From positions 111,414,001 to 111,478,000 of the forward strand of contig OZ260663.1 of assembly GCA_965285935.1 (NCBI GenBank): DNA of 64,000 bases, written 5' to 3'. Positions 1 through 27,170 of this stretch are shown here, one piece after another. The position numbers were made by a program, and so were the translations under genes. The first letter of the stretch is position 1; every line of letters starts with the position of its first letter. Under the pieces are notes generated by a model, which was not told where the DNA came from, ran no database searches, and was given only the letters and a program-made list of their open reading frames with translations. The stretch is from Ophelia neglecta (lineage: Eukaryota).

Positions 1-163
1 AATCACAAAGCTGATCATCGTCCACATATGGTGTAAGCTGAACAATGTCCGGCTCATAATTAGAAGCCAATTCATCGTTTTCATAATTCATATTCAATAA
101 ATACTTCAGGGAGTTAGAGTTTAATCCACCAAAGGTTTTCAGAAACGTGCTTGAGCTATCCAC
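1..163 (-). CDS. N-terminus of LINE ORF2 (pre-endonuclease segment), partial at the window edge
   Basis: Translating from GTG at 163 gives VDSSSTFLKTFGGLNSNSLKYLLN...DIVQLTPY, which aligns with (M)DSANTFLKTFGGLNNNSLNYILN...DIIQLSPY of ORF 16815..19997. Confidence 0.85.
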   Translation of the reverse strand, partial: MDSSSTFLKTFGGLNSNSLKYLLNMNYENDELASNYEPDIVQLTPYVDDDQLCD

Positions 164-822: not shown

Positions 823-1599
823 TTATGATGTGTCAGTCTGGCATTTGTCCATCTCCTCCTGTGACAATCTAAGAGTCTTGAGGGGACCGGTTCCTGGCAT
901 GTCACGGAATTTCAAGATTCTAGGCACCGAAAAAGGAATAAAGGCGATCCTACCATTTTCTCGGATGGCCTTCATTTTTTCCCGTAATATTGCCTCTTCC
1001 TTTCTGGTTACAACGTCGACATCATCAGTGATAAAGAGACCAGATTTTGCGAGAGATTTGGGAGCTCCTTTGAGGATAATGTCACGATCCGTCCAGTTTA
1101 GCAGCTTGGCGTGTATTATGCGTGGCTTTTTCCGCTTGATATCGGGTCTAGCAGGGGTTCTATGAGCTCTCTCAAATACAATGTCTTGCAGGTCCAGCTT
1201 ATCCTTTAACAGAGTGTTTATATCTTGCATTAGATTTTCACTTGTTTCGTCCTTTCTCTCGGCCAGTCCGTGAATAATTATATTGTTTTGTCGCCCTCTA
1301 TTACTCAAGTCAACATTTCTCCTCTTTAGTTCGTTGAGATCTTCTTTAGTGGCCATACTCTGCTTAGCATTGAGACTTTCATTTTCATTGCACAACACAG
1401 ACTCCTCCATGTGGGCCAACCCTTTTTCTAATTCGTTAATCCTGAATTCGTTTGCCTCTGTCTTCCTCTCAATATCCTACATGCGCTTTTCATGTGAATC
1501 TAGTTTGACTTCAATAGCAGTGACTGTTTGGAGAATCTTAACCAGCATATCATTTTGTGAGGGGTTACCCCCCAGTGACTTCATGGTTGATTCTGACAT
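823..1599 (-). pseudogene. LINE ORF1 (coiled coil + L1-ORF1p/Transposase_22-like RRM-CTD) with one premature stop
   Basis: ATG at 1599 (MSESTMKSLGGNPSQ...) is in frame with ORF 823..1419, with a single in-frame TAG at 1479..1477. Motifs NRGRQNNIIIHGL, FERAHR, KPRIIHAKL and FITDD match ORF1 20684..21448. Confidence 0.88.
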
Positions 1600-2297: not shown

Positions 2298-2318
2298 TAA
2301 TCGCTGTAAAATAACACT

Positions 2319-2711
2319 ATGCCAAGAATAGTTAATATTAACATAAATGGATTGAATAGAAAACTAAAGAGGCAAGTGTTGTTTAACAAATTGAAACAGC
2401 TGAAAGCAGATGTTGTTCTTCTACAGGAAACTCATCTAGGATCAGTGGATATTCTGACTCTGGAAGCTAGGTGGGCGGGACAAATTTATTGTGCTCCAGG
2501 CGCAGCACAAAGTAAGGGTGAACTGATATTATTAAGTCCAACATTTGTTGAATCATGTAGCAATATTAATGAAATTATAAATGAAAGTAGAATTTTGGGA
2601 GTGCGAGCAACTTATGATAACAAGTGTCACATTTTCCTTAATATTTATGCTCCATGTAAATCACATGACAAATTATTTTTTTTAGAAGGTTAAATTTAAT
2701 TATTAAGGATA
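2319..2711 (+). pseudogene. Tx1/L1 ORF2, 5' segment (APE endonuclease N-half)
   Basis: NINGL...DVVLLQETH...NIYAP motifs. An apparent 1-bp frameshift lies near 2691; the frame resumes after the LTR insertion as IKDIQDNHPDCYLILGGDFN. Confidence 0.92.
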
Positions 2712-3102
2712 TGAAGTAGTTCTAGGTTCTTTTATGCAGTGAAAATACAATAGTAATAAATAGCAACTTACTATTAGTTTCTGCCGATATGTGTCAGAAA
2801 TGGCCTCTATTAAGGGGCCTCGATACGTCAGAAGCCCTGTTTGCTGAGGGGTCCTGACAGGTCCGTATTCAATGAGATGTCCAACCAATCTGCCGACTGC
2901 GTTACTAGATCCCCTCGATCCGGTGGTTGGTGGCGTCCTCTAGTGGAAAGTCTATGAACTGACTTCCCGAGACCAGTCTCTTGGCGGTAGTTTACTCTCA
3001 ATTTCATCCGAGACCGGAAGTAGAAGATAATCCGAAGGGAGGTGTGCAAAGGCCATGTGCGAGCCAGAAGTGTAAGCACATAAAAGATAGGCGCCTACAT
3101 CA
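2712..3102 (-). repeat. 3' LTR (391 bp)
   Basis: Direct repeat of 5720..6110 with no mismatch seen by eye. In element orientation the termini are TGATGTAG...CTACTTCA (7/8 inverted repeat). Confidence 0.96.
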
Positions 3103-3115
3103 CTCTTCCCCACTT
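3103..3115 (-). promoter_or_regulatory. Polypurine tract (plus-strand primer site)
   Basis: AAGTGGGGAAGAG on the minus strand directly abuts the 3' LTR. Confidence 0.85.
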
Positions 3116-3288
3116 AAAATTTTAGGAGAACGTCACCCAGAAAAGAATAGAGCAGTCGACTAGTAAGTAATCTACACTCAAAGAAATGCGACTCAGGATA
3201 TAGAGAGTTAACAATATTTTCAGTTACTCCAAACAGGTGTAAGAATTGAGCTTATGAGTGCCCAGACTTAATATATATATATATATAT

Positions 3289-3446
3289 CAGTTTCATTCA
3301 GAAACTATTTATCACACTAGTGGTTACGTATGAACTTAAATATAACTCCACCAGTCATACCAGATATGTAACAGTTTCATTCAGAAACTATTTATCACAT
3401 TAGTAGTTTCGTATAAATTTACATATATAAAACCACCAGTCATACC
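3289..3446. repeat. Imperfect tandem duplication (~83-bp period) in the 3' non-coding region of the LTR element
   Basis: cagtttcattcagaaactatttatcaca...ccaccagtcatacc occurs at 3289 and 3372, preceded by a short (TA)n. Confidence 0.85.
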
Positions 3447-3469
3447 CTCCTTAATATTAATTACAGAAA

Positions 3470-4969
3470 TTAGGAAGTGCCCGGAACAACTTGATTGCCA
3501 GCAAAGTCTTTAACGGACTCTTTCATCAACATTTCTTGTTGTTGGGCAGGGGTGAGTAGGGAGAAAAGGGTCTGAAGACTTCTCCAGTGTGTCAGAAATT
3601 CGATTTTTCCCATCATAGAGAAGTCTTCAGGAGGGCAAGTATAGATAGTGACATCTTTCTTCATTGCCAACAATATGCATTCAAAAAGGTGATTTTCTTT
3701 GTCGGTAAAATTACAATTATGAGAATTCTCCCTCCACCATCGCTGATTAATCAATATTTTTGCCAACTTATTTAGAGGGTTGTCGCCAGAACACCACCAA
3801 TAGCCAGAATGATCCAGGTATGAGTAGGCCAATTCATTAGGGAGCACCTGAGCCAGTTCATGTAGCCAACCTAGAACCAGATTGCCTCGCAGTGCTTTGT
3901 CTACATCAGAAACATTAGTGTTGTGTTTCCAATTATAATGATATTTCTGAAACAGCGCACTGTTTCTGGAAGCCCTACCATATGGTGAACAATACCACGG
4001 AGTGTGATGTTTCTCAAAGTGTTGTCTAAGCTGTCTCACCATTATTTGACAGCTGGGACATTTTCGGAGAAGTTTTTTCTTTTCAGTGGAATTGTTCTGG
4101 CTCCCGTTTCCCCCACTATTATGGCCCTTCACCGGATATGGGTGATGTCTATTACTTCTGACATTACCAAGTCTGGATCTTATTGATGGTGTGGGTGCAG
4201 CTTGGGGGAGTTTGTTGAAATTCTTATCAGAATTTCGATTTGAACTCCCTGGCATGTTAGGGTTAGCCGGAAGTGTTAATGGGTTAGTAGGTGTATTGTC
4301 TCTAGTAGTCTCTTTGGTATTCGAAACCACTTTTTCACTATTGCTTACATTGGGTTCCGTCCCTTTCCTCGTGCTTATGTACTCTAATTTATTTTTCAGG
4401 TGTGCCTCCACTGTCCGTTTTACCGGAGCATCTACTTCGGGCAGAAGCATCAGTGGGTGGCTAAACTGGGGGTGCAGCACAGGAAACTTTTCCATAATCA
4501 CATGATTGAGGAGGAAGTCAATGTCGCCCGCTAAGGCTTCGCAATGGAAAATTTCGGGGACAATACAACTAAGGGACACATAAAAAGAAGAATGGCTAGG
4601 CTTCTCTCTTAACATCTTGGCTAAGTAGGTGGGATTCCAATAGGCCCTTGCTCTACCTATTTTTCTGAGCAATTGCGCTAGAGGGACGGGAATAAGTTTA
4701 GTAGTTACCATAGGGAAAACCAGTGCAGATGTTTCATCGCTATTTTCTACTACTATGGGTGCCCGTAGTGCAGTTTGGAGAGACACTTCAGCCGCAGTTT
4801 TAAAATGAAACAAATGGTGTTCGTGTCTCTCTTTAGGGTCTATTTTTTCCAAATAGACCAGTGCATAGAGTTTAAAGTCTTCACCTTTAAAAAAGGCTAC
4901 CACCGACTTTACTTGTGCTGGACTTAAAAGTTGGAATTGGATTACTACCATAGGCCTAGAGAGTTCCAT
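3470..4969 (-). CDS. Uncharacterised 499-aa protein of the LTR element: N-terminal globular domain, N/S/P/T-rich linker, basic patch, C2H2-like zinc finger and helical C-terminal domain
   Basis: Uninterrupted 1.5-kb ORF with an optimal Kozak context (ACC ATG G). CPSC-x9-H-x3-HH directly follows KKKLLRK. No signal peptide or transmembrane stretch is apparent. Confidence 0.8.
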   Translation of the reverse strand: MELSRPMVVIQFQLLSPAQVKSVVAFFKGEDFKLYALVYLEKIDPKERHEHHLFHFKTAAEVSLQTALRAPIVVENSDETSALVFPMVTTKLIPVPLAQLLRKIGRARAYWNPTYLAKMLREKPSHSSFYVSLSCIVPEIFHCEALAGDIDFLLNHVIMEKFPVLHPQFSHPLMLLPEVDAPVKRTVEAHLKNKLEYISTRKGTEPNVSNSEKVVSNTKETTRDNTPTNPLTLPANPNMPGSSNRNSDKNFNKLPQAAPTPSIRSRLGNVRSNRHHPYPVKGHNSGGNGSQNNSTEKKKLLRKCPSCQIMVRQLRQHFEKHHTPWYCSPYGRASRNSALFQKYHYNWKHNTNVSDVDKALRGNLVLGWLHELAQVLPNELAYSYLDHSGYWWCSGDNPLNKLAKILINQRWWRENSHNCNFTDKENHLFECILLAMKKDVTIYTCPPEDFSMMGKIEFLTHWRSLQTLFSLLTPAQQQEMLMKESVKDFAGNQVVPGTS

Positions 4970-5094
4970 GGTGTATACCTTAAAAGAAAGGATTTCAATA
5001 CTTCATTAATTTCTGTAATGTCATGTTTATCGTGAGATAATGCATTACCAGTATAGACAATCCTCTCGTTTATTACTTTTAACTTTACGGCCTC

Positions 5095-5178
5095 TTAAAG
5101 AGTTTCTTTCTTTGACCCAATTCCAGTTTATTCTTTTAGTTCCTCTACACTTGCATCATTAATATTTATTTGATCCAT
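5095..5178 (-). pseudogene. Relic helix-hairpin-helix (ComEA/HHH_3-like) peptide at the gag position
   Basis: Manual translation MDQININDASVEELKE*TGIGSKKETL* fits the ININxASxEELxxLPGIGxxKA HhH consensus, with TAA in place of the conserved Leu. Confidence 0.7.
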
Positions 5179-5705
5179 ATTGTACAAATGTCAATTTTCA
5201 AATAAACATGTTCTGAAGTGAAAAGGGAATTCTGTTTCTATTTCCAAAGTGTGAAATTTACAAGTAAATTTAGAAGTAATTTGTACTAAACTGCACAAAT
5301 GTTCAACAAAAGCTGCATAAATTTCTAAGCTAGAAGTCAGTAGGCTAAACTAAGGTAGGGCCGAACTGCCTTAAACATGTACTGACATATAAACAAAGGA
5401 AACACACGCCTAAGCTAACTAGGAGTGTTGGCACACCTTGCCTGCTGACACCACAACAATGGAATGTTTGTTTAAGGGTTAGCAAGCCTGCCTGCCAGTT
5501 ATATAACAGCAGTTTTCTGCAGATGCAAAGTCCTGCTAATATTCAAAATTATCTAGATGAACACAAATAAAGATGCCCTATCTAGACTTAATTCACGTAG
5601 GAGGATTGTCTCATTAAAGCTCCTAAATGAAAATAGCAAGTGTCAGAAAACCTGCAAGTTGCGTTATTCACCTGTATTTTTCACTACAATATTTTGAAAA
5701 AACCG

Positions 5706-5717
5706 CTTCTGACACCA
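5706..5717 (-). promoter_or_regulatory. Primer-binding site complementary to the tRNA-Leu 3' end
   Basis: TGGTGTCAGAAG(CGG) lies 2 nt inside the 5' LTR. Metazoan tRNA-Leu(CAA) ends ...CCCACUUCUGACACCA. Confidence 0.85.
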
Positions 5718-5719
5718 GT

Positions 5720-6110
5720 TGAAGTAGTTCTAGGTTCTTTTATGCAGTGAAAATACAATAGTAATAAATAGCAACTTACTATTAGTTTCTGCCGATATGT
5801 GTCAGAAATGGCCTCTATTAAGGGGCCTCGATACGTCAGAAGCCCTGTTTGCTGAGGGGTCCTGACAGGTCCGTATTCAATGAGATGTCCAACCAATCTG
5901 CCGACTGCGTTACTAGATCCCCTCGATCCGGTGGTTGGTGGCGTCCTCTAGTGGAAAGTCTATGAACTGACTTCCCGAGACCAGTCTCTTGGCGGTAGTT
6001 TACTCTCAATTTCATCCGAGACCGGAAGTAGAAGATAATCCGAAGGGAGGTGTGCAAAGGCCATGTGCGAGCCAGAAGTGTAAGCACATAAAAGATAGGC
6101 GCCTACATCA
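5720..6110 (-). repeat. 5' LTR (391 bp)
   Basis: Direct repeat of 2712..3102, followed on the plus strand by the target duplication GATA. Confidence 0.96.
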
Positions 6111-9100
6111 GATATACAAGATAATCACCCAGACTGTTATTTAATATTAGGTGGCGACTTTAATTGTACTATTCAACCTGGTCTCGATATTATCGCAGGA
6201 AAACCACATCCAACCAATGAGGTTTCTGCTTTCAAGTGCATTTTAAATACCCTACACGATGCTTATAGAATATTCCACCCAGAAAGGAAAGACTTTACCT
6301 GGAAACATCTATCTAATAATATAATTAGGAGACTTGATTACATATTTGCCTGTGGTTTGGCCATGGAGTTGATTACCACCATAGATATTATAGATTTCCC
6401 CCAAACTGACCATAGGGGGATATATGTAACCTATTCAGAAAGTAAGGAAATCAGGGGCAAATCTTATTGGAAGTTTAATAACAGTCTTCTTAAAGACATA
6501 CAGCATGTTAATTCAATCTATAACCTTATTGAGTAATTATTAAACACACATGAACATTGGCCACCAGAAATGCAGCTGGAGACGATAAAAACGAAGGTTA
6601 GGGAATATACCATGAAACACAGCCAAGAGAGAGCTTCTAAAATGAAATCAGAAGAAAAAATACTGAAATTACAACTAGAAAAAATTAACTTAGAATTAGT
6701 AAATAACCCTAATGATAATCTATTAAATACAAAGCTAAGAGATATTAAGTTTAAAATTTAATTATTTGAAATTGAAAGGGCAAGGGGGGCACAACTAAGG
6801 TCAAAAAACAAATGGGTAACAGACGGCGAGAAAAACACCAAATATTTTCTGGGTTTAGAGAAATCTAAGGGTAAAAATAACAATATTAACCATCTAAATA
6901 CAGATAGCGGGGATATTAGGGGAACTGATCCAATCCTAGTTGAAATTGAGGCATTCTATAAACAGTTATATAAAAGAGAGGATAATTACAATAAAAGAGA
7001 TTTTGAAAACTTAATAAAAGATATTGAATTTAACACGCTTACTAATGATGAGCGGAATTCTTGTGAAGGTCTGTTAACCCTCTCTGATTGTACTATTGCA
7101 TTAAAGGGAATGAAAAATGACTCAAGCCCTGGAATTGATGGATTAACATCGGCCTGGTATAAAATGTTTTGGCCAAAAATAGGACAAATAGTGACCAATT
7201 CCATAAATAATGGTTAAAAGATCGGTTTTCTAAGCCCCTCGCAGAGGCTTAGTATAATTAACCTTCATCATAAGGGAAAGGACCTGCCACGGGAAAAACT
7301 TAACAATTGGAGGCCAATAGCGTTATAAACAACCGATTATAAAATAGCTGCAAAAGCCCTAGCTAATAGGCTTACCAAAGTTATAAAAAACTGGTTTCTT
7401 CTAAACAAACTGGATTCATCAAGGGAAGAAGTTCCGCGGAAATAATTAGGGCGATAGACGATATTTTAGAATATTTAGACCAAAAGAATTTGCATGGAAT
7501 CTTAATTGCAATAGATTTTAGAAAAGCATTTGATTCAATAAATAAAAGATACATGATTGACTGTTTAGAAAAAATTAACTTTGGCCCTATGTTTGTTAGA
7601 TGGGTGGAGACACCGAACAGCTTTCTACAAGCTAGAGTTGTTAATAATGGTTGATTTACAAATACTTTCACGCTAGAGCGGGGGTATAAGACATGGATGC
7701 CCCTTATCCCCCATGTTGTTTATCCTGGCACTTGAATTCTTCTCAATTAAATTAGATAATGAAAACTCAATTACGGGTATATTTGTACCGGGCTGTGATA
7801 AGCCCATTAAACTGTTGCAGTTTGCAGATGATAGTACTGGCTTGCTCAATGATGAAGAATCTGTTATACTCTTTTTGCAACTACTGCACAAATTTGATAT
7901 TATATCTGGATTACAACTTAATAAGTCAAAGACAGAAGCCATGTGGCTTGGATGTTGGAAATACCGAAGGAAGCAAATAGAGCAACTAAAATGGAAACTG
8001 TTCCCTGAAAACAAAGTTACCATTTTGGGAATAACCGTGTGTTCAAATAAAACAGCTAGTCATTGTGATGAAAACTGGGAACGGCATACTGCAATATGTG
8101 AAAATGTTATCAGGGCCTGGTCCAAAAGATATTTGTCAATATTTGGTAAAATTGTAATAATTAAAAATTTTCTTTCGTCACAATTTGCATACACTCTTCG
8201 ATGTATTAGATACCCAGTACATGTATTAAATAAGTTGAATGGGATGTTTTTTAAATTTCTGTGGTCTGATAAAGATCCAGAAAGGAATCGGGTAACAGAC
8301 CGTGTTAAACGAGAATTTGTTTCTCAGCCAATCCCACAAGGCGGTCTTGGCATGCCTGATTTACACATTATGCAGAAACAACTCCATTTTAAATGGATCT
8401 CCAAATTAATAGAAGATAGCAATGAAATGTGGAAATTCCTTCCCCGTACTTATTAGGCATCATATGGGAGAAATATGGATGTATTTAATAGTAATATTAA
8501 ATCAGACGGATTTAGGCAAATAGAAACATCGAAACTCGAATTGGAATTTTGGAAATATTTTCTTTTTGATTGGCTGGACATAAATTCTCTGGATACAGGC
8601 AGAGTCACCAGTGTTATATTCAACAATAGGGATATCACGTATCGTGGTGCTCCTATCTTTGTACCTAGATGGTTGCAACATGGTTTGGTGTATGTCCAAG
8701 ATATCTTGCTTGATGGAGTACTGAACTATGAAAAAATATTCAATATATTAGGTGACAATGCGAGAACTCGATGGGAGCTAAATATTGTTCGAAATGCATT
8801 ATCTATTAAAAATATGGATAAAATAAGTGGAGTGCTAACACGTCGGGATATTATATTTAGGGGCTCACCCCTGTTAACATATACATCGAAAATGTTAAAA
8901 ACTGGAATTATGAAATTACTTCGTAGAAATGAAAATATAATATTTTCTACATATTTATATGAAAGATATGGTAATATCTGTACAACTGAAGAAGTCTTTC
9001 AAATGGCAGATATATATACACGTAGTGAAGCCAAAATTGCTAGTCTCCAATGGAAGATACTACATAACATCTACCCAGTAGGAGCATATCTGAAAAAATT

Positions 9101-9428
9101 AAGAATTCATGAGAATGATAAATGTAAATACTGCAATGAGGTGGACTCAGTAGAACATTTCTTTTTTCAATGTCACACAATATATAATCTGTGGCAACAT
9201 GTAGAAGTGGACATTATGATAAAAGCCGAAAAACGTGTAAAACTATCAGTAGCAGAAATAATTTTCGGTATAAATCGCGACGTCTGTCCATCACTCAAAA
9301 TATATAAATATGTCAATTTACTAATTTTATTAGGCAAACTTTGTGTGACAAAATTCAAATACGGAAAATCTTGTAATTTATTACAAATATATGAACACGA
9401 TAGGTGTGTACGCAATTGTTACTTATAA
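6111..9428 (+). pseudogene. Tx1/L1 ORF2, 3' segment (endonuclease C-half, reverse transcriptase, C-terminal zinc-binding domain), multiple stops and frameshifts
   Basis: GGDFN, RRLDYIF, TDHRG, NNWRPI, DFRKAFDS, GCPLSPMLF, QFADD and CKYCNEVDSVEHFFFQC are spread over broken ORFs (6570..6761, 7713..8456, 8475..9428). Confidence 0.93.
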
Positions 9429-16693: not shown

Positions 16694-16827
16694 ATGGGAA
16701 TTAATGAAAGAGAGTATTTAACAAGAAAATATTAATATCAACCAACATTAAACCACATTGATGGGAATTAATGAAAGAGAGTATTAAACAAGAAAATATT
16801 AATATTAACTAATATTAAACATCATTG
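16694..16827. repeat. 67-bp tandem duplication spanning the ORF2 stop and proximal 3'UTR
   Basis: atgggaattaatgaaagagagtatt(t/a)aacaagaaaatattaatat... occurs at 16694 and 16761. Confidence 0.85.
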
Positions 16828-19800
16828 ATGTCCAACGTATTTTGGAGGTTACATGTTTGACAAACATAACAGTTTACAACAGTACAGTCAACAGAATAGC
16901 AGTTTATTAAGAAAGACTTTATATATTTTGCAAAACCATGTAAGCTATGTGTGTATACCATGTCCTTAATATGATCTGGTATTTCATTTAAAATATGAAT
17001 AATCTTAAATCTGATACATTTTTTGGCAAACTCGTGTTTTACCAGACCTTGGTAATATCTGGATTTATTTCTAGTATCATACGAGTGAATTTCTGATACA
17101 TGCTGTATATTGAACTGTGTGAAGTAATATGGAATACTATTATTCACATATTTGAAATAGAATTTCAAGGCACAAAGTTTATAAATATCCTCTGATTTTA
17201 GTAGATTCAATCGTTTAAAGATTGGTAAGGTGTGTGATATGTAAGAGCTGTTTGTAATGATGCGGACTACTTTTTTCTGCAATTTATCTATTCTAGTAGT
17301 TTCTAAACCCCAAGCAAGAATACAATAATTCAAATGTGGCAAAATAAGAGTGTTGTAAATAGTTCTCAAAACTTCCCGAGGAAGAATGAGCTTTATTCTA
17401 TTAAGAACTCCAATAGTTTTAGAAATCTTATTTGATATTTTATTCAAATGATCATTCCAATTCATGTATTTGTTCAAATTTAGACCAAGAAAATTGAAAT
17501 CATCCACACACTCTACTTCCACCGCATCCATAAATAGTCTAGGAATCATTATCCTCTTTCCCGGCATGTGAGAAATCATAAATTTGGTTTTAGCTGTGTT
17601 TAAGGATAATTTGTTCAGCCTGAGCCATTCACTAATTTTTGCCAATTCAGAATTTATAATGTCACCGACGGCAAGAGATAAGTCCAAGTGCTTGAACATA
17701 CTAAGTGTGCTGGATAACGTAGTGTCATCTGCATATATGATAGTTTGAAATAAGTTACTGACAGTACTGATGTCATTCATGTAAATAATAAAGAGTAGAG
17801 GACCCATAATTGATCCTTGTGGGACGCCTGTAGCAATAGAGGCCGTATCAGAGCGAGTGTTATTTATGTGGACAAGCTGTTTACGGTCATTTAAATAGCT
17901 TCTAAGAAGATCCAAAGAAGAGCCTGAAATACCATAATAGTTTAATTTATAAAGTAAGATATCGTGATTTAACGTGTCAAACGCTTTAGATAGATCCATA
18001 AAAATATTAAGCGGAGTTTCATCCTTATCTAACTCATTTACTATTCTATCAATCAATTCTAAAGCAGCAAACTCCGTAGAGTGCTGTTTTCTGAATCCAT
18101 ATTGACTGTAGCAAAACAATTTATAATGCTCAAAGTATTCATGTAATTGGTCGGCAATGATTCTTTCAAATATCTTGGATACAGTTGGAAGGACAGATAT
18201 GGGACGATAATTCTCAAATAAAGTGCTGTCGCCTTTCTTAAAAATCGGTGTAACTTTCGCAATTTTAAGTTTATTTGGAAATATTCCTGAAGCAAAAGAT
18301 TGATTAATTACTTTAGTTAAAGGGCAAACAAGTTCATGTTTAATTTGTTTCAATAATATAGAGGACAACCCGTCCAAACCGCAACTACTTTTTGATTTCA
18401 TTTTGTCTATCTGAGAAGAAACAGTCAATTCTGACACTGGCTTAAATATAAATGTATTTGGAGAAGGGGTTTTAAGGTAATAGTGGAGAGATTTGTTAGA
18501 GTTATTTGTTAATTTTGATGCTAAACTAGGACCGATATTGATGAAGTATTTATTAAATTCATTGGCGACAACCTGTGGGTCAGAAACTAGTAGACCATTT
18601 ATGTTAAATTTATCAGGGTATGATTTAGTTACCCTCTGCCTATTTAAGATTTCATTTATTGTTGACCATGTGTTTTTCATATCGCCTTTGAATTTTGTGA
18701 AGCGCGAATTATAGTAGTTACGTTTAGCCAATCTAATATTGCGGTTAAGAATTGTATTGTATGTATCTAGGTTTGTTTTAAGTGTGCTATATTGTGGTGT
18801 ATTCTGTAATGTTGATTTCACCCTTTTATACAGCTTATCTCTAAATGTAATAGATCTAATGAGCCCCTGAGTAATCCATTTTGATTTTTTATGCCTGTGC
18901 TTGTTATATTTAACCCACTTTGGTTGCAAATGTTTATTGTATGAATCTGTGATAATTTTATCAATGACATTATAATTAGAATTAGGGTCAGCAGATTCGT
19001 TTGGATCAATATTTGCCATTATTTGTTGGTTAACAATTTCAGTTTTAAAGCGTTCAATAGATTGAGGGTTTTGTTGACTTATCTCAATGTAAGCAGGGGA
19101 AATTTTGCGAGTGTGTATCATATTATTAATAGCAATATAATACGGATGATGATCTGATATTTGACTTAATAAAATACCACAAGTCGAATCGTACATTCTA
19201 GTACTCAGTTTACAGATAAAATTGTCTATTAATGTTGCACTGCATTTAGAGAATCTAGTTGGAAGTGTAATTTTAGGATAAAAACTGTGAGAGGTAAGAT
19301 TGTCGAAATATTCAGCAAATACAGGTTTTTCATTTATCTTTAATAAATCAATATTGTAATCTCCAGCAAGTAGGGCTTCGCAATTAGTTTTCTCTAAACT
19401 CAGAAGTACACCGCCAAATTCTTCAATGAACAATCTATAATTATCAAGCAGATCTCTAGGTGGTCTGTATATATTGCCTATCACAACCTTTCTTTGAATA
19501 CAGGGTCCGGTTACCTCTATGAATTGACCCTCCCAGACTGTTGAGGACTTACATAAATCCAGTACATTATAATCATAACATTCCTTCAGATATATAAGAA
19601 GGCCACCATGAGCTGAGCACATTTTACTTTGTGATATCATCTTATAGCCATCTAGTTGCAACAGTGACAAATCTGAGCCTTCAGAGAGCCAGGTTTCCTG
19701 GAAGCAGATAGCACTAAATGAGGTATTACAGGTATTTAGTTCTTCAAGAAAAATCTGGATCTGGTCGAATTTTGCATTTATACTCTGACAATTCATGCTA

Positions 19801-19997
19801 AGTACACTAAAGGCACTATGTTTATTAGCTAATATACTAGAAAGTTCATCTGTTTCGTGATATGGAGATAGCTGAATTATATCTGCCTCGTTATCAGCTG
19901 ACAATTCGTCACTAGAGCAGCCAGGGTTCAATATATAATTTAAGGAGTTATTATTTAAACCTCCAAATGTCTTCAAAAATGTATTGGCACTATCCAC
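16815..19997 (-). CDS. LINE ORF2: APE endonuclease + reverse transcriptase
   Basis: MNCQS, FQETWL, GNIYRPP, AGDYN, IDN and SDH (endonuclease); NYRPIS, QYGFR, DLSKAFD, GVPQGSIMGP and YADD (RT); C-terminal CTVVNCYVC. Starts at GTG. Confidence 0.96.
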   Translation of the reverse strand: MDSANTFLKTFGGLNNNSLNYILNPGCSSDELSADNEADIIQLSPYHETDELSSILANKHSAFSVLSMNCQSINAKFDQIQIFLEELNTCNTSFSAICFQETWLSEGSDLSLLQLDGYKMISQSKMCSAHGGLLIYLKECYDYNVLDLCKSSTVWEGQFIEVTGPCIQRKVVIGNIYRPPRDLLDNYRLFIEEFGGVLLSLEKTNCEALLAGDYNIDLLKINEKPVFAEYFDNLTSHSFYPKITLPTRFSKCSATLIDNFICKLSTRMYDSTCGILLSQISDHHPYYIAINNMIHTRKISPAYIEISQQNPQSIERFKTEIVNQQIMANIDPNESADPNSNYNVIDKIITDSYNKHLQPKWVKYNKHRHKKSKWITQGLIRSITFRDKLYKRVKSTLQNTPQYSTLKTNLDTYNTILNRNIRLAKRNYYNSRFTKFKGDMKNTWSTINEILNRQRVTKSYPDKFNINGLLVSDPQVVANEFNKYFINIGPSLASKLTNNSNKSLHYYLKTPSPNTFIFKPVSELTVSSQIDKMKSKSSCGLDGLSSILLKQIKHELVCPLTKVINQSFASGIFPNKLKIAKVTPIFKKGDSTLFENYRPISVLPTVSKIFERIIADQLHEYFEHYKLFCYSQYGFRKQHSTEFAALELIDRIVNELDKDETPLNIFMDLSKAFDTLNHDILLYKLNYYGISGSSLDLLRSYLNDRKQLVHINNTRSDTASIATGVPQGSIMGPLLFIIYMNDISTVSNLFQTIIYADDTTLSSTLSMFKHLDLSLAVGDIINSELAKISEWLRLNKLSLNTAKTKFMISHMPGKRIMIPRLFMDAVEVECVDDFNFLGLNLNKYMNWNDHLNKISNKISKTIGVLNRIKLILPREVLRTIYNTLILPHLNYCILAWGLETTRIDKLQKKVVRIITNSSYISHTLPIFKRLNLLKSEDIYKLCALKFYFKYVNNSIPYYFTQFNIQHVSEIHSYDTRNKSRYYQGLVKHEFAKKCIRFKIIHILNEIPDHIKDMVYTHSLHGFAKYIKSFLINCYSVDCTVVNCYVCQTCNLQNTLDINDV

Positions 19998-20262
19998 AGT
20001 ATGATGGAGATGTGAAAAGAATAAAATTTGCAGTTGCCGTCATATAATTAACATGCCCGTCCAAAAACAACCAGGTGCCAAAACAAAATAGAATAAATAG
20101 AAAATATACTGGATCTGAATATCCCAGAGAAAAACACATTACTATACAAATGGTAGGACATCTAATCATGTCCCACGGTGTGCACATGCCATCATTAGCC
20201 ATTGACACACTCTTCAGCATTGAAAGATGGAATAACAGGTGTGGTAAATGAGGATTAGACAT
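19990..20262 (-). CDS. Candidate small hydrophobic upstream ORF whose stop overlaps the ORF2 start
   Basis: 90 aa with an ATG start and a hydrophobic stretch (VYFLFILFCFGTWLFL). It ends ...CG* in TGTGGATAG, exactly as ORF 156..368 does in the related element. Confidence 0.35.
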   Translation of the reverse strand: MSNPHLPHLLFHLSMLKSVSMANDGMCTPWDMIRCPTICIVMCFSLGYSDPVYFLFILFCFGTWLFLDGHVNYMTATANFILFTSPSYCG

Positions 20263-20574
20263 TTAGGAACGCAAGTAGTACAAAAACAACGTATTTAGGA
20301 GTGTCTGTGCATTGGAGTCATGCAGAAAGATGCCTGACAAGCGTGTATACCAAGTGGACAGAGTAATATAGTGAGTCAGAGGCATAAATGATTCAATAGT
20401 CCACCAGGCCCATAGTGGTACAGGGGTCAAATAAAGTAGATCATAAAGGCGTATACATGTACATTTTCACCAGACCCCATCAAGTACCCACCGACATCAG
20501 GTAAGTCAGCAGAGTTAACTGTGAACAGTCATGTAATGTTAGGCCCAGTGTACACATTCACCCGGCATACCTGA

Positions 20575-20692
20575 GACAATATTTAAAGGTCAACCGCGGG
20601 GTCCTACAGATACAGAACAATGGTGTGTTTAAGACAATATTTAATGGTCAACCGCGGGGGTCAAAAAGAACAAAAAGGTGTGTTTAAGACAA
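20575..20692. repeat. ~58-bp imperfect tandem duplication just downstream of the ORF1 stop
   Basis: gacaatatttaa(a/t)ggtcaaccgcgggg...ggtgtgtttaa occurs at 20575 and 20633. Confidence 0.8.
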
Positions 20693-21448
20693 ACACTTAT
20701 CTAGTTCCTCCTCAGTTAACCTGTATGTCTTTAGTGGCCCAGTGCCCGGCGAATCCCTATATCTCAGTATCCTAGGAATAGTGAAGGGTATGAACGCGAT
20801 CCTGCCATTTTTTCGGATTTCCTTCATTTTAATCCTCAGGAGATCCTCTTCTTTTCTAGTTACTGCGTCAATGTCATCCGTAAAAAATAGGCCGGAATCC
20901 TTAAGAGCTTTATGAGCTCGTCTAAGAATGTTATCCCTGTCTGCCCAGTTGAGAAGTTTAGCGTGAATCATACGGGGTCTATCTTTACTTGGGTCAGGTT
21001 TAGATGGAGTCCTGTGTACCCGTTCAATGATGACATCTTTTAAGTTTAGTTTTTCCTCTAGTATGGTCTTAATATCAGCTTTAAGATGGTCGCTTGTTTC
21101 CTCGTGTCTCTCTGGCAGACCATGTAAGACAATGTTATTGCGCCTGCCTCGATTACTTAGGTCCACGATTTTCTTTTTCATTTCACGGACTTCAGTCTTA
21201 GGTACCATATCCCTCTTTAGAGAGTCTATCTCATGTTCCTTTTCAAATAGAGTTTCCTCTAAGTTTGCCAGCCCCCTCTCCAGATCAGTAATTCGAGAAT
21301 TGAAGTCCTTACAGTCACTTTCAATATCCCGCATACGTGTTTCCTGAGTGTCTAGCTTTTCCTCAATGGAAGTGACCTTTGCAAGGATCAGTGCCAGCGT
21401 TTGTTCCTGGGAGTTACCCCCCTGAGCCTGAGCCTGAGACAATGACAT
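20684..21448 (-). CDS. LINE ORF1 protein (coiled coil + L1-ORF1p/Transposase_22-like RNA-binding region)
   Basis: Heptad-rich N-half, then NRGRRNNIVLHGLPE, IERVHR, RPRMIHAKL and FFTDD. Intact 254 aa upstream of the EN-RT ORF2. Confidence 0.92.
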   Translation of the reverse strand: MSLSQAQAQGGNSQEQTLALILAKVTSIEEKLDTQETRMRDIESDCKDFNSRITDLERGLANLEETLFEKEHEIDSLKRDMVPKTEVREMKKKIVDLSNRGRRNNIVLHGLPERHEETSDHLKADIKTILEEKLNLKDVIIERVHRTPSKPDPSKDRPRMIHAKLLNWADRDNILRRAHKALKDSGLFFTDDIDAVTRKEEDLLRIKMKEIRKNGRIAFIPFTIPRILRYRDSPGTGPLKTYRLTEEELDKCLS

Positions 21449-21687
21449 TCTTTCCGTCAGAACCTGTACACACTTTTAAGCCAAAATAACAGTAATTCAC
21501 TAATATCTAACCAGGCACATTCGCAGCACAACACCAAGACACACAGTATAGCCTAGAAGTTCCTCATTTTAATTTAATCCAACACATACAAATCTAGTAT
21601 TTTAGTCCCACACCTCAATGCCTGCAAACCACTAAGTAGCCATGACCTTCACCTTCAGGCATTTAATATGAGATTACTTGTAGGTTT

Positions 21688-21740: not shown

Positions 21741-24617
21741 ATATATAAATCAGAAGGACTGGGAGGTAATGGAAAAAGAAGTATAAAGGAATAAGTGAAT
21801 TCTGTACCAACTGTTTCCATGTTTTAGCGCAGCTCGGTTCCCAAGAGACAAATTGGCTGTGTGAGGCCGAAATTAGATGAAAAATGTCGACGGGAAGGTC
21901 GTAAAAGACGTTCGCTCATTCATGTCAGTTATAAAAACATAAGTGCACAAAGGCAATGGGAGCTACTGCAGTTTCAGCCATAGCAAATATATCAACTTAA
22001 GATTGATGGTGGGACGATAGCGCCCAATATGTTTTTGTTAGTTTCCTTCCAGTGGCAGCTTTTCAAACTTCTTTCATTCTGTGGTAGAGTGCAGTTATAA
22101 GCAGAACAACCATCGATGAATAGGCTTGACAGTTGATTATATTATCCATACGTTAATTTAATTATTCGTAGCGCATGCCATGAAGGTACCTTGATTATTA
22201 TCCACAAATTATGTCTCACGTTTCACTTTCGTTAATTCTATTTTAATTTAGCTAATAATTCAATCATGGGCCACTCAGTCGGTTGCAATGTTTACACCGA
22301 TTACCAATATCACATTTTTCTCTTTCTCCGTCGTGTGTCCCCATGGTCAAATGAAGCATTTAGAGCGAGGAGTCGATCAATATGCTTGGTAACTGATATT
22401 GGTCCGAGATCTTCTATCTTGTAGAAGCATATCTAAGGAGGAAATCATATCGTTGCACTCAGGACAATGTCTACGTTCGATTTGAGGTTTAAATTCAGCC
22501 GACATAAGATCCCTAATCAGGACACGCGCTACGAACACAGAACAAGGCTAGTGTTATCTGGAATTTACTCATGTGAGCGTAATTAGTGATTACAAAAAAA
22601 AGAAGTGTGTGTGTGTGTGTGTGTTGCCTTGTGGAGAAGGGGGCGGGTACTAACTGTACATTGGATTCACAGTGTGTACATGAGCATCACAACAACCATG
22701 CTTAACGTTTATATGATGAACCAAACTGACCCTAGTATAATCGCCTAAATAAATCGTCATCAAAACCAGGGACTGGAAAAAAGATCACAGTTAAGAAAGC
22801 AACTACACTTTACGCCTGTGAAAGGTGATAATGGGGGAATTCGCAATTGCATAGTCCGGAGTGTCCATATTAGTAGCTGGATTAATTGTTATAGTCGATA
22901 TAAAAGAAAAAAATATATCTTACGAGCAATAGGAAGAGCGAAAAGTGAACCGCAAACGGCTGGCAGTTTCGGGCAAAATTAAAATGTCCATGGTACGTAT
23001 AAGAATTGATATAAGGGAAAGATTTTACCCGGGATTAAAAGATCTTCAAATTTTGTAATAAGGGTGAACTCGTAATTAAAGAACATGCCATTACTATATG
23101 TGAATAATATATCATAAGGTTAAAATTCTATTCAAAACTCTCATACTTTACTGAATTTTATGTTTATAGACAGATTTATTTCCTTTGATGATTAAACGTA
23201 AAAAAACCTTACGGGTTTACCTTCAATTACAAGTTCGATAAAACAACCTTATACCATGTTTGTGTCGTGTGCAAGCAGGTTAACTCGACATTTTTGAAAC
23301 TATTACGTTTATACATGAATCAATCTGAATATTGACTCTTTGATTCTAGATTATTTCAGTTATTAATGGTATTAAGTTGGTGTTATATGGAAATATGGGT
23401 ATGTTTGACCATATTTTAGACATCTCTATTCATTCCTTGTATTATAAATTCCGCCCTTTGTCGCTACAGCAAATACTGCACATAAAAGTAGGCCACACTA
23501 TAAAGGACGAATCAATTAATTAGTATATATGATGTAACCCAAGGAGATGTTGCATGCAGGCGATGTTTTCGATATTTTGGCCAATCATGTACTATTGTAA
23601 AAGGTAAGCCTTTTAATAACAGTACAAGCCAGTCCATTAATGTCACCTGTGCCACATTATGGCAAAACATGGAATGGCGAAATTTTCCTGTCCCGAAACA
23701 TCCCTGTTTACATTAGAATAAATTGTGAAAGTATTTTTCCCTTTTAGTCAGGTCCAAACGCTTATATTCCCCAAGCGCTAGTGAAATCAAGGGCGAACTA
23801 ACAGATGATCTCATAACAGTCACAAACAATACTAAACACGTCGGGCGAATTTTAAGTGCCTAGGTAATGAAGGGAATGAACTTTAAGGTAGGCTAGACGA
23901 TTCTCCGTGGACCCGCCTTCTTCACTTCTAAGGGAATAATGTTGACCGAAACGATAGTATAACATATATATTATGTAGACAACAATAGTCTACCTTTATT
24001 GAAACAACACTAACGGCAGACCATTATTGTGTCTGTATATCAACGAGGCTGCTGATAAAGAGGGTAATTCTGCGTTATTAACACAGTAGAAGAGCTAATT
24101 TGAAAACACGAATAAGGCAAATCCGTCATTTACTATATTCTTACACGTTAGCAAAAAGTAATTAATCTAATTTCTCAACCAAATCTGATCTCTGAGCATG
24201 TCTTATTACTCAACTGAAAGAAATCGGGCACAACAAACAGTAATCATTCGCCAGAAGTTGAAATTAACTAGAGTAAAGAGTTCTATTGTGTTCAATTTTA
24301 ATTAGGCCGTGTTTTCGTTCCTGAGTTTCGAAGCTTCGAAATCCCGTATAAAACCATAATCACGTAAATATTTAACAACTTCTAATTCATAACATGGGAG
24401 AAGATTGTCCCAAAGATTCAATGCATTGATACCTGATGATAACCGATTAGTAAGTGAATGTTTCTATTTAAACACTACCAGGGCATATCCACCATGCTTG
24501 TAACTTTGGTATTTATACAAGTGGCAACCTTCGAACACTCTTATCATGGCGTAGACCGAGTGCGTTCAAGGTACACAACAAACGAAAATAGTTCAATTCG
24601 CGAGAGAAAGTGCCTCC

Positions 24618-25665
24618 ATGACGTTGGACATGACTACAAATCCTATTTCCCTGTATACGGAAATTGTGTTATCATCCAACCTTTCCCGGTGAATACATGC
24701 CCGATCACTGGCAGAACAAAAAAAAAGAATCTATGTGTCCTGACCTGCTTGGAAGACAATCAGAAATGTACGGAGGGCCACCTATCGCAGCGATTGGATT
24801 ATTCGGCCACCTTTATGGTCATTTGGTGTTCCAGTGTGCGCCATTTGTCATCGTCCGATTATCTGTCTGTACTGGAACTACAGACACACGGGCGCTGCTC
24901 TACCTTGTTTGTGGTACTCTTATTCAGTTGCTTCGACCGTTTTCTACAGGGCGAATTGTATTCTTCGCGATACGAAGATGATTGTGGAAGTAATTCAGTA
25001 TTCTGCTACCGGCCTGATAGTATCGCTATTAGTCGAAGGCTTTCTAGTCACGTGGTTTCCTTTCACAGCTCCAGGCTCATATAGACCTACGACGGCCGGC
25101 ATAGTTTTTGCCACAATGAGAGCCCTATCACTGGTTTACAGTTTATCCACTGTAGCTCAATTCAGGATCCGTCATGGACGATGCGATGTTATAGATCATG
25201 ACTTCTACTTTAACCAGTATCGAGCCGATTGATGTTCCCAAGTCTTTACTCGTTTATCCCCGTATCGCTTCTGGTCATCATAAAAACCGCTACGGCTGTA
25301 CACCTACTACGCAATCGTGACGACTCCTTAGCATAAAATCAAGACAAGACGTCCCCCTGGTGACCAAAGTAATTTTCGTCGTAGAAGCTGCCTACACAGC
25401 GTTCACCATTGCCAGGAAGCATATTCCAGCCAGTAATGAAGGAGCGGCGTAGGTGCCAATTGTTTAAGATGGCGTATACTTCTAATATGTGCTTGTTTCA
25501 GAGGAATTCAGAAAAAGATTTCTGGCCAAGGTTGGCGTAAGGAGTGCAAAAAAAAACACAACCAAGGTAGGATGCGCCTCTGGGAAGCAATCGCATAGTC
25601 ACCAGCTCAGGTACTTGTCTGTTATTAGTAGGATGTCTCACAAAAACATTACAAGCATGGTATAA
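24618..25665 (+). pseudogene. Intronless rhodopsin-class (class A, peptide-receptor-like) GPCR pseudogene
   Basis: Stitching frames gives colinear segments: TM1 YGGPPIAAIGLFGHL, TM2 RHLSSSDYLSVL/TDTRALLYLVCG, TM3 VIQYSATGLIVSLLVEGFLVTWFP (degenerate ERF), TM4 AGIVFATMRALSLVYSL, TM5 LYSFIPVSLLVIIKTA, TM6 VTKVIFVVEAAYTAFTI and TM7/H8 YF*YVLVSEEFRKRFL. Several frameshifts and stops; the end coordinates are approximate. Confidence 0.8.
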
Positions 25666-26221: not shown

Positions 26222-27170
26222 GTGGTGGGTTATGGGTGTGTTATGTGTTATGGGAGGGCTATGGGGCGGGTTAAGAGTGTGTTATGTGGTATGGGAGGGC
26301 TATGGGGTGGGTAAGGGGTGTGTTATGGGAGGGCTATGGGGTGGGTTAGGGGTGTGATATGGGAGGGCTGTGGGGTGGGTTAGTGGTGTGTTATGGGAGG
26401 GCTATGGGGTGGGTTAGGGGTGTGTTATGTGGTATGGGAGGGCTATGGGGCGGGTTAGGGGTGTGTTATGGGAGGGATATGGGGTGGGTTAGGGGTGTGT
26501 TATGGGAGGGCAATGGGGTGGGTTAGGGATGTGTTATGGGAAGGCTATGGGGTGGGTTAGGGGTGTGTTATGGGAGGGCTATGGGGTGGGTTAGGGGTGT
26601 GGTATGGGAGGGCTATGGGGTGGGTTAGGGGTGTGTTATGGGAGGGCTATGGGGTGGGTTAGGGGTGTGTTATGGGAGGGCTGTGGGGTGGGTTAGTGGT
26701 GTGTTATGAGAGGGCTATGGGGTTGGTTAGGGGTGTGTTATGGGAGGGCTGTGGGGTGGGTTAGGGGTGTGTTATGGGAGGGCTGTGGGGTGGGTTAGGG
26801 GTGTGTTATGGGAGGGCTGTGGGGTGGGTTAGGGGTGTGTTATGGGAGGGCTATTGGGTGGGTTAGGGGTGTGTTATGGGAGGGATGTGGGGTGGGTTAG
26901 GGGTGTGTTATGGGAGGGCTATGGTGTGGGTAAAGGGTGTGTTATGGGAGGGCTATTGGGTGGGTTAGGGGTGTGTTATGGGAGGGCTGTGGGGTGGGTT
27001 AGGGGTATGTTATGGGAGGGCTATGGGGTGGGTTAGGGGTGTGTCATGTGAGAGCTATTGGGTGGGTTAGGTGTGTGTTATGGGAAGGCTATTGGGTGGG
27101 TTAGGGGTGTGTTATGGGAGGGCTGTGGGGTGGGTTAGGGGTGTGTTATGGGAGGGCTATGGGGTGGTTT
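26222..27170 (+). repeat. 34-bp G-rich minisatellite, about 27 copies
   Basis: Consensus TTATGGGAGGGCTATGGGGTGGGTTAGGGGTGTG, head to tail with no spacers. Confidence 0.97.

What the first reader, a model, noticed from the sequence alone, without database searches (positions are those of the whole stretch)
2712..6110. Recently mobilised pol-less LTR element that keeps one intact orphan gene
Seen: all cis signals are intact (apparently identical 391-bp LTRs, 4-bp TSD, tRNA-Leu PBS, PPT). Protease, RT, RNase H and integrase are absent and the gag position is a dead relic, yet 1.5 kb of the 2.6-kb interior is one uninterrupted ORF. Known: identical LTRs indicate recent insertion, and non-autonomous LTR derivatives (TRIM/LARD types) are usually non-coding. 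Inference: this is a satellite-like retroelement mobilised in trans by a Ty3/gypsy helper, whose cargo gene stays under selection while gag-pol was lost. That could be a two-component helper/cargo system, for example an anti-silencing, transactivating or helper-hijacking factor. It is the best candidate for an undescribed system in this window.
Basis: partly seen in the sequence, partly recalled or inferred. Interest (0 to 1): 0.9.

Follow-up and report, generated by a model that had tools for sequence, protein, structure and literature searches.

The report
Young pol-less LTR retrotransposon, orphan ORF
This is a real, very recently inserted LTR retrotransposon that has lost its enzymes and keeps one 499-codon gene with no detectable relatives; that layout is already known (gag-only or semi-autonomous LTR elements), so it is a new family of a known kind, not a proven new system.

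Summary
The anatomy is real. There are two identical 391-bp LTRs (2712-3102, 5720-6110) with TG..CA ends and a 4-bp GATA target duplication. A PBS matches the 3' end of tRNA-Leu(CAA) over 12 nt, and a polypurine tract abuts the other LTR. The element lies on the minus strand, nested in an older broken LINE.

The 2.6-kb interior has no protease, RT, RNase H or integrase. It holds one sense ORF (4969..3470, 499 aa) with a strong start context. The open frame runs 510 codons, against a maximum of 216 in shuffles.

The ORF has no hit in Pfam, in PDB sequences, in 1.84 billion protein representatives, or in the metagenome and genome contig scans. Two single-sequence AlphaFold models were unusable. 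The window holds no second copy and no autonomous partner. Selection, copy number and helper identity therefore cannot be tested here. The claimed dead gag relic has no support.

My best reading is a semi-autonomous LTR element of the TR-GAG type. Its single ORF would be a fast-evolving Gag-equivalent RNA-binding or structural protein, with enzymes supplied in trans. A non-Gag cargo gene is not excluded, at about 0.2.

The parts
2708..2711 (.). Target-site duplication, left copy (GATA)
   Evidence: Same 4 nt at 6111-6114
2712..3102 (-). 3' LTR (391 bp) of the minus-strand element
   Evidence: 391/391 identical to 5720-6110, TG..CA ends
3103..3115 (-). Polypurine tract: 13 nt with 12 purines on the sense strand, directly abutting the 3' LTR
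   Evidence: Read; position and composition fit a plus-strand primer site (inference)
3116..3469 (-). 3' untranslated interior, with a (TA)n run and an 83-bp tandem duplication (3281-3446)
   Evidence: 86-88% identity between the two units; no Pfam hit in its open pieces
3470..4969 (-). Single intact ORF, 499 aa plus stop, an orphan. Sub-regions: aa 1-200 (4370-4969); basic low-complexity linker aa 201-300 (4070-4369); CxxC-x9-HxxxH motif aa 304-321 (4007-4060); Trp-rich region aa 322-499 (3473-4006), helical only in low-confidence models
   Evidence: open frame 510 codons vs max 216 in shuffles; ACCATGG start; no TM segment. No homologue or family. AF2 pLDDT 37
4970..5699 (-). Untranslated leader between PBS and ORF. 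All 11 upstream ATGs counted for the 750-nt post-LTR stretch fall here. No recognisable coding relic
5700..5717 (-). Primer-binding site, 2 nt from the 5' LTR. 5706-5717 is the complement of the last 12 nt of tRNA-Leu-CAA
   Evidence: sequence; tRNA sequence printed in PMC10359600
5640..5870 (-). U5-PBS-leader RNA structure enclosing the PBS
   Evidence: MFE -69.7 kcal/mol, z -5.06 on the sense strand against z -3.28 antisense
5720..6110 (-). 5' LTR (391 bp)
6111..6114 (.). Target-site duplication, right copy (GATA)
2310..9425 (+). Host site: ORF2 (endonuclease-RT-zinc-binding domain) of an older LINE copy, broken. It has at least 5 in-frame stops, at least 3 frame changes and 1 insertion, which is the LTR element
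   Evidence: The N-part of Exo_endo_phos is left of the insertion and the C-part is right of it. RVT_1 and zf-RVT lie further on.

Best explanation
This is a young, non-autonomous ('semi-autonomous') LTR retrotransposon on the minus strand, nested in a decayed LINE. SHOWN: it keeps every cis-acting replication signal. These are the LTRs, a PBS for a tRNA-Leu-type primer held in a stable U5/leader stem, a polypurine tract and a 4-bp target duplication. It encodes no protease, reverse transcriptase, RNase H or integrase. INFERRED: its RNA was therefore reverse-transcribed and integrated by enzymes from an unlinked autonomous LTR element that is not in this window. INFERRED, as the most likely reading only: its one 499-aa ORF is the element's own Gag-equivalent. 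An N-terminal domain is followed by a basic low-complexity linker, a CxxC..HxxxH metal-binding-type motif and a Trp-rich tail that low-confidence models draw as helical. This protein would bind and package the element's own RNA into particles whose enzymes come from the helper. That is the layout and logic described for TR-GAG elements. The sequence has diverged so far, or the lineage is so poorly sampled, that no Gag profile recognises it.
For: Cis signals and recent insertion. No enzymes. A real coding frame: 510 open codons vs max 216 in shuffles, ACCATGG start, and GC 42.6% in the ORF against 34.5% and 31.9% in the flanking untranslated interior. The ORF is in sense, is the only long frame, and lies between leader and PPT. 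The linker at aa 201-300 has 16 K+R against 6 D+E and is followed by the Cys/His motif at aa 304-321. The layout matches the published TR-GAG1: LTR 485 bp, tRNA-Leu PBS, one 433-aa ORF with a zinc finger at residue 275 and a further C-terminal tail. Gag-only families are common among non-autonomous LTR elements, at 28 of 115 families in sugar beet, and 61 of those 115 could not be linked to an autonomous partner. Evolutionary logic (inference): in an element without enzymes, an ORF is most easily kept if its product favours the RNA that encodes it, as a packaging protein does.
Against: There is no positive evidence of Gag. No Retrotrans_gag, UBN2, DUF1759 or zf-CCHC match appears even at E<=10 on split domains. 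There is no CCHC knuckle and no PDB sequence match. Both structure models are unusable at pLDDT 37, so no fold comparison was made. The 750-nt leader carries 11 upstream ATGs, which is not what an efficiently scanned gag leader looks like. Only one copy was seen, so neither family-level propagation nor selection is demonstrated.
Confidence: 0.45

Rival explanations
1. Gag and pol are both gone, and the ORF is a non-Gag cargo or accessory gene, for example a nucleic-acid-binding, anti-silencing, transactivating or helper-hijacking factor. The element would be the satellite half of a helper/satellite pair.
For: No Gag signature by any search. The Cys/His motif is CCHH-like rather than the CCHC knuckle of retroelement nucleocapsids. 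The C-terminal region has Trp about every 21 residues and a marginal internal repeat at E 0.05, which is more like a DNA/RNA-binding repeat than a capsid. The long leader is rich in upstream ATGs. A donor-like site lies just after the PBS and an acceptor-like site lies about 240 nt before the ORF, as for accessory genes expressed from spliced RNA.
Against: All of this is absence of evidence or weak pattern. Gag proteins are notoriously divergent. The same layout occurs in a bona fide gag-only element. The splice-like sites are consensus matches only and would still leave 7 upstream ATGs. A trans-acting factor gives no advantage to the copy that encodes it, so it is harder to keep intact in a parasite of a parasite (inference).
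Confidence: 0.2
2. This is a one-off defective copy. An ordinary autonomous element lost its pol region by template switching during reverse transcription, or by deletion after insertion. The ORF is its gag or a fused remnant, and there is no propagating family.
For: Internal deletions are common in LTR elements (established knowledge). Only one copy is visible, and no other LTR, interior or protein match exists in 64 kb.
Against: No trace of any pol domain flanks the ORF. The ORF ends in a normal stop followed by 354 nt of AT-rich untranslated sequence with its own tandem duplication. With identical LTRs, little time has passed for a post-insertion deletion.
Confidence: 0.15
3. The ORF is a host or foreign gene fragment captured by the element (transduction) and plays no role in the element's life cycle.
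For: It is an orphan with a higher GC content than the rest of the interior.
Against: No homologue exists among about 15 billion proteins or 1.84 billion representatives, whereas a host gene would usually have relatives. No poly(A) remnant or other retrocopy mark lies next to it. The higher GC content is what coding sequence normally shows against untranslated sequence.
Confidence: 0.1
4. This is not a retroelement at all, but a chance or segmental duplication flanking an unrelated ORF.
For: None beyond the fact that only one copy is seen.
Against: TG..CA ends, a 4-bp duplication, a PBS at 2 nt, an abutting PPT, sense orientation of the ORF and a clean split of a LINE endonuclease domain all coincide.
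Confidence: 0.01

Closest known systems
[quoted passage not shown] 2015, PMC4350172)
   Same: Under 4 kb; LTRs plus PBS plus PPT plus target duplication; one sense ORF and no pol. TR-GAG1 has a tRNA-Leu PBS, a 433-aa ORF with a zinc finger about 60% of the way along and a C-terminal tail. No autonomous partner was found for it either.
   Different: There the ORF has recognisable GAG domains (UBN2, zf-C2HC), the duplication is 5 bp and the hosts are plants. Here no GAG domain is detectable, the duplication is 4 bp, and the host looks like an animal, probably a marine invertebrate, judging only from LINE relatives.
MaLR elements of mammals (non-autonomous relatives of ERV-L/MERV-L)
   Same: [quoted passage not shown] From my own knowledge, not tested here: LTRs of 350-400 bp, a tRNA-Leu-type primer site shared with ERV-L, and a short interior with one non-retroviral-looking ORF.
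   Different: This is not a mammalian context, since the LINEs here are at most 52% identical to anything in the databases. No sequence comparison with MaLR was possible because no repeat library is among the tools. No membership is claimed.
BARE-2/BARE-1 of barley (two-component LTR system)
   Same: A dependent LTR element that relies on an autonomous partner for a missing function (described in PMC4350172).
   Different: BARE-2 lacks Gag and keeps pol, which is the opposite deficiency. Its partner is known; none is known here.
LARD / TRIM non-autonomous LTR elements
   Same: LTRs, PBS and PPT without enzymes, moved in trans.
   Different: Those are non-coding by definition, and under 1 kb (TRIM) or over 4 kb (LARD). 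This element is 3.4 kb and 44% of it is one ORF.

Membership tests
LTR retrotransposon (order LTR) | Direct long terminal repeats with TG..CA ends | tested here: met
   391-bp LTRs, 100% identical, TG..CA
LTR retrotransposon (order LTR) | Short target-site duplication (4-6 bp) | tested here: met
   GATA on both sides. The flanks are the two halves of one LINE endonuclease domain
LTR retrotransposon (order LTR) | PBS complementary to a tRNA 3' end next to the 5' LTR | tested here: met
   12 contiguous nt match tRNA-Leu-CAA as printed in PMC10359600. The host's own tRNA is not available, since no tRNA gene lies in the window, so the remaining 6 nt are untested
LTR retrotransposon (order LTR) | Polypurine tract next to the 3' LTR | tested here: met
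   13-nt tract with 12 purines at 3103-3115
Autonomous LTR retrotransposon (Ty3/gypsy, BEL/Pao, Ty1/copia, ERV) | pol with protease, RT, RNase H and integrase | tested here: not met
   No such domain in the ORF or in any interior open piece
   The element has no pol, and no LTR-type pol lies anywhere in the window. The source genome is not in the collections
TR-GAG | Under 4 kb with LTR/PBS/PPT, and a single ORF without pol | tested here: met
   3,399 bp with one 499-aa ORF
TR-GAG | The ORF encodes a recognisable GAG (capsid domain and zinc knuckle) | tested here: not met
   No gag or zf family in Pfam at E<=10. The fold test was impossible at pLDDT 37. I therefore say it works like a TR-GAG and do not file it as a member
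LARD / TRIM | Non-coding interior; size over 4 kb or under 1 kb | tested here: not met
   1.5-kb intact ORF; element 3.4 kb
Retrozyme / Cassandra | Hammerhead ribozyme or 5S-like sequence in the LTRs | tested here: not met
   No Rfam match at E<=1 in 2600-6200
Env-like ORF | Signal peptide and transmembrane anchor | tested here: not met
   The best 19-residue hydropathy window scores 1.53, so there is no TM-grade segment
MaLR | Sequence similarity to MaLR LTRs or interior; mammalian host | not testable with these tools
   No repeat library is available. The LINE context argues against a mammal

The most novel reading that the evidence does not exclude
The ORF is not a Gag. It would be a new kind of nucleic-acid-binding accessory protein (a CCHH-type motif plus Trp-periodic repeats that low-confidence models draw as helical). 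It would let a gag-less, pol-less LTR element exploit the particles and enzymes of an unrelated autonomous element in an animal genome. That would be a true satellite/helper pair among LTR retroelements, with a satellite-specific gene kept by selection.
Probability: 0.15. Interest if true: 0.75.

Novelty: new member of a known kind. Interest (0 to 1): 0.35.

Why it matters
If the family proves to be multi-copy with a conserved ORF, it would be an animal counterpart of the plant TR-GAG or 'semi-autonomous' elements. It would also be a very young one, useful for asking what a dependent retroelement must encode for itself. If the ORF proved not to be a Gag, it would point to an unknown way of parasitising another retroelement. 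As it stands, the value is mainly annotation: a clean, recently inserted, orphan-coding LTR element that standard domain-based pipelines would call non-coding or miss.

Tried and rejected
1. Homology for the ORF gave nothing at any level:
- Pfam on the whole ORF and on three parts, up to E 10
- PDB sequences at E<=10, noise only
- word-index search of 5.8 billion clusters, on the whole ORF and on aa 293-499 alone
- full phmmer against 1.84 billion representatives
- exact look-ups
- metagenome contigs by LTR/PBS junction pattern and by protein
- prokaryotic genome contigs by protein

2. Structure: AlphaFold2 without an alignment gave pLDDT 36.9 for the whole ORF and 37.3 for aa 293-499. I ran no fold search, because matches to such models are meaningless.

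3. Other copies or a helper in the window: blastn, tblastn and repeat finders found none. Pfam on 50 open pieces across the window, nearly all of the longer ones, found only LINE domains.

4. 'Dead gag relic': the open pieces of the leader have no family match, so I rejected the claim as unsupported.

5. Retrozyme, Cassandra or tRNA-derived LTR: no Rfam or ARAGORN hit.

6. Host identification: the LINE ORF2 relatives are anonymous metagenome contigs, one from a hydrothermal-vent sample. This supports only a weak guess of a marine invertebrate. I do not take the contig for human.

7. Splicing: only consensus-like donor and acceptor sites were listed. No tool predicts introns here, so I built and searched no joined model.

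8. Literature searches for animal gag-only LTR elements returned nothing useful.
Full report
OBSERVATION

The two repeats at 2712-3102 and 5720-6110 are 391 bp long and identical at every position. They start with TG and end with CA, and their 8-nt termini are inverted repeats matching at 7 of 8 positions. GATA lies immediately outside both ends, at 2708-2711 and 6111-6114. This is the only dispersed repeat of at least 150 bp in the 64-kb window.

ORIENTATION AND CIS SIGNALS

The element reads on the minus strand.
- Two nucleotides inside the right-hand LTR lies an 18-nt primer-binding site (5700-5717).
- Its first 12 nt are the exact complement of the 3' end of tRNA-Leu-CAA, as that tRNA is printed in PMC10359600. 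The CAG isoacceptor printed there differs within those 12 nt.
- The host's own tRNA is not available, because no tRNA gene lies in the window. The inner 6 nt are therefore untested.
- Abutting the left-hand LTR is a 13-nt tract with 12 purines on the sense strand (3103-3115).
- The opposite orientation offers neither signal.
- The sense RNA from U5 through the PBS into the leader (5870..5640) folds to -69.7 kcal/mol. Its z-score is -5.06 against 200 shuffles, compared with -3.28 for the antisense strand. The PBS is enclosed by a long U5/leader stem.

TARGET SITE

The left flank (from 2310) encodes the N-terminal part of an AP-type endonuclease. The right flank (from 6111) continues with the C-terminal part. 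RT and zinc-binding RT-associated domains follow up to 9425. I compared the two flanks separately and did not join them.

The LTR element is thus a clean nested insertion in an older LINE copy. That LINE's ORF2 carries at least 5 in-frame stops, at least 3 frame changes and this 1 insertion.

AGE

Zero differences in 2 x 391 bp give a 95% upper bound of 3/(782 x mu) years. That is about 0.4 to 3.8 million years for mu of 1e-8 to 1e-9 per site per year. The host rate is unknown, and LTR-LTR gene conversion could also keep the LTRs identical. The age is therefore an inference.

INTERIOR (2,617 bp)

The interior holds one long frame in sense orientation. It runs 4969..3470 and encodes 499 aa, with the ATG in an ACCATGG context.
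- The open frame is 510 codons, against a maximum of 216 (mean 94) in 2000 shuffles of the interior. It is a genuine coding sequence or was one until very recently.
- Its GC content is 42.6%, against 34.5% in the leader and 31.9% in the 3' untranslated part.
- Upstream lie 750 nt after the LTR with 11 ATGs and only short open pieces, none with a Pfam match.
- Downstream lie 354 nt of untranslated interior with a (TA)n run and an 83-bp tandem duplication, and then the 13-nt polypurine tract.
- No protease, RT, RNase H or integrase is detectable anywhere in the interior.

THE ORF PRODUCT

No relative was found at any level:
- Pfam, whole and in three parts, up to E 10
- PDB sequences
- the 5.8-billion-cluster word search, on the whole ORF and on aa 293-499 alone
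- phmmer against 1.84 billion representatives
- exact look-ups
- contig scans

The intact LINE ORF2 of the window is also absent from the collection by exact look-up, and its best relatives are only 52% identical. The source genome is evidently not in these collections. 'Orphan' is therefore partly a sampling statement.

Two AlphaFold2 runs without an alignment gave pLDDT 36.9 and 37.3. I ran no fold search on such models.

What the sequence itself shows:
- a first 200 residues of mixed character
- a basic, Ser/Asn/Pro/Thr-rich linker at aa 201-300, with 16 K+R against 6 D+E
- a CxxC-x9-HxxxH motif at aa 304-321
- a C-terminal region containing 8 of the protein's 9 tryptophans, five of them spaced about 21 residues apart
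- a marginal internal repeat, aa 321-361 against 387-428, at E 0.05
- no transmembrane-grade segment

MECHANISM

Shown: the element has all cis signals and no enzymes, and it inserted recently.

Inferred: reverse transcription and integration were done by proteins of an unlinked autonomous element. No such element lies in the window, since every Pfam hit on the open pieces tested belongs to LINEs.

For the ORF I commit, at moderate confidence, to a Gag-equivalent role in binding and packaging the element's own RNA. The reasons are as follows.
- Its position and orientation fit a gag.
- The basic linker followed by a metal-binding-type motif is a nucleocapsid-like arrangement.
- Its layout closely matches the published TR-GAG1: LTR 485 bp, tRNA-Leu PBS, one 433-aa ORF with a zinc finger at residue 275 and a C-terminal tail, and no autonomous partner found.
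- A cis-acting packaging protein is the kind of gene a dependent element can keep, because it favours the RNA that encodes it.

Against this reading, there is no positive Gag signature, the motif is CCHH-like rather than CCHC, and the leader is rich in upstream ATGs.

RIVALS

- A one-off pol deletion of an ordinary element (0.15).
- A captured gene (0.1).
- Not a retroelement (0.01).

None can be settled without other copies.

COMPARISON WITH WHAT IS KNOWN

Coding non-autonomous LTR elements are established.
- TR-GAG are described as elements that keep only GAG (PMC4350172).
- In sugar beet, 28 of 115 non-autonomous families retain only GAG/PROT, and 61 of the 115 have no traceable autonomous partner. 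The authors describe a continuum rather than classes (PMC13570524).
- BARE-2/BARE-1 is a described two-component pair.
- MaLR is a huge mammalian non-autonomous group with almost no retroviral homology (PMC6466679).

The present element works like a TR-GAG. It fails that family's defining test, a recognisable GAG domain, so I do not file it as a member. I rate it a new member of a known kind, namely non-autonomous single-ORF LTR retrotransposons.

STEPS LEFT OUT, AND A SLIP

I did not scan the viral-contig collection with the element's protein or LTR pattern. I could not tell whether that would amount to fetching an animal virus by pattern.

I tested no spliced model, because no tool predicts introns here. 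Donor-like and acceptor-like sites are consensus matches only.

In my private reasoning I began to recall tRNA-Leu letters from memory. The tRNA comparison rests only on the sequence printed in PMC10359600.

I do not take this contig for human.

VERDICT

The interpretation as an undescribed two-component system goes beyond the evidence. Interest is 0.35. The cargo reading keeps a probability of about 0.15-0.2 and would deserve about 0.75 if shown.

Noticed in passing
window 5835-5843 and 5799-5807 (same places in the 3' LTR: 2827-2835, 2791-2799), 5640-5648, and one site inside the ORF: The sense RNA carries four matches of at least 9 nt to the strand that mimics the primer tRNA's 3' end, that is, the complement of the PBS. 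Two lie in the LTR upstream of the PBS, one about 50 nt downstream of the PBS, and one in the ORF. Two such matches in the LTR occur in only 0.1% of 5000 shuffles. They could be intramolecular partners of the PBS or extra primer contacts.
   Followed up: partly
window 16815-21475, minus strand: A LINE with both reading frames open. ORF1 is 254 aa with coiled-coil-type matches only, and ORF2 is 1060 aa with endonuclease plus RT. A 67-bp tandem duplication sits at its 3' end and (AT)22 lies upstream. Its best relatives are 52% identical and sit in anonymous metagenome contigs, one from a hydrothermal-vent sample.
   Followed up: partly
window 26285-27172: A G-rich minisatellite with a 34-nt unit in about 26 copies at 91% match. 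It gives the strongest GC skew in the window, +0.51.
   Followed up: no
window 8-163, minus strand: A fragment encoding the first 52 residues of a LINE ORF2, 60% identical to the intact ORF2 at 16815-19997. This is a second, truncated copy of that LINE family at the window edge.
   Followed up: no
window 3281-3446: An 83-bp tandem duplication (two units, 86-88% identical) and a (TA)n run lie in the element's 3' untranslated interior. Short internal duplications are reported as frequent in non-autonomous LTR elements.
   Followed up: no
window 826-1476 (-), 24458-25081 (+), 53743-54366 (-): Three open frames of 208-217 codons have no Pfam match and no similarity to the finding's ORF. They may be unknown repeats or chance frames.
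   Followed up: no
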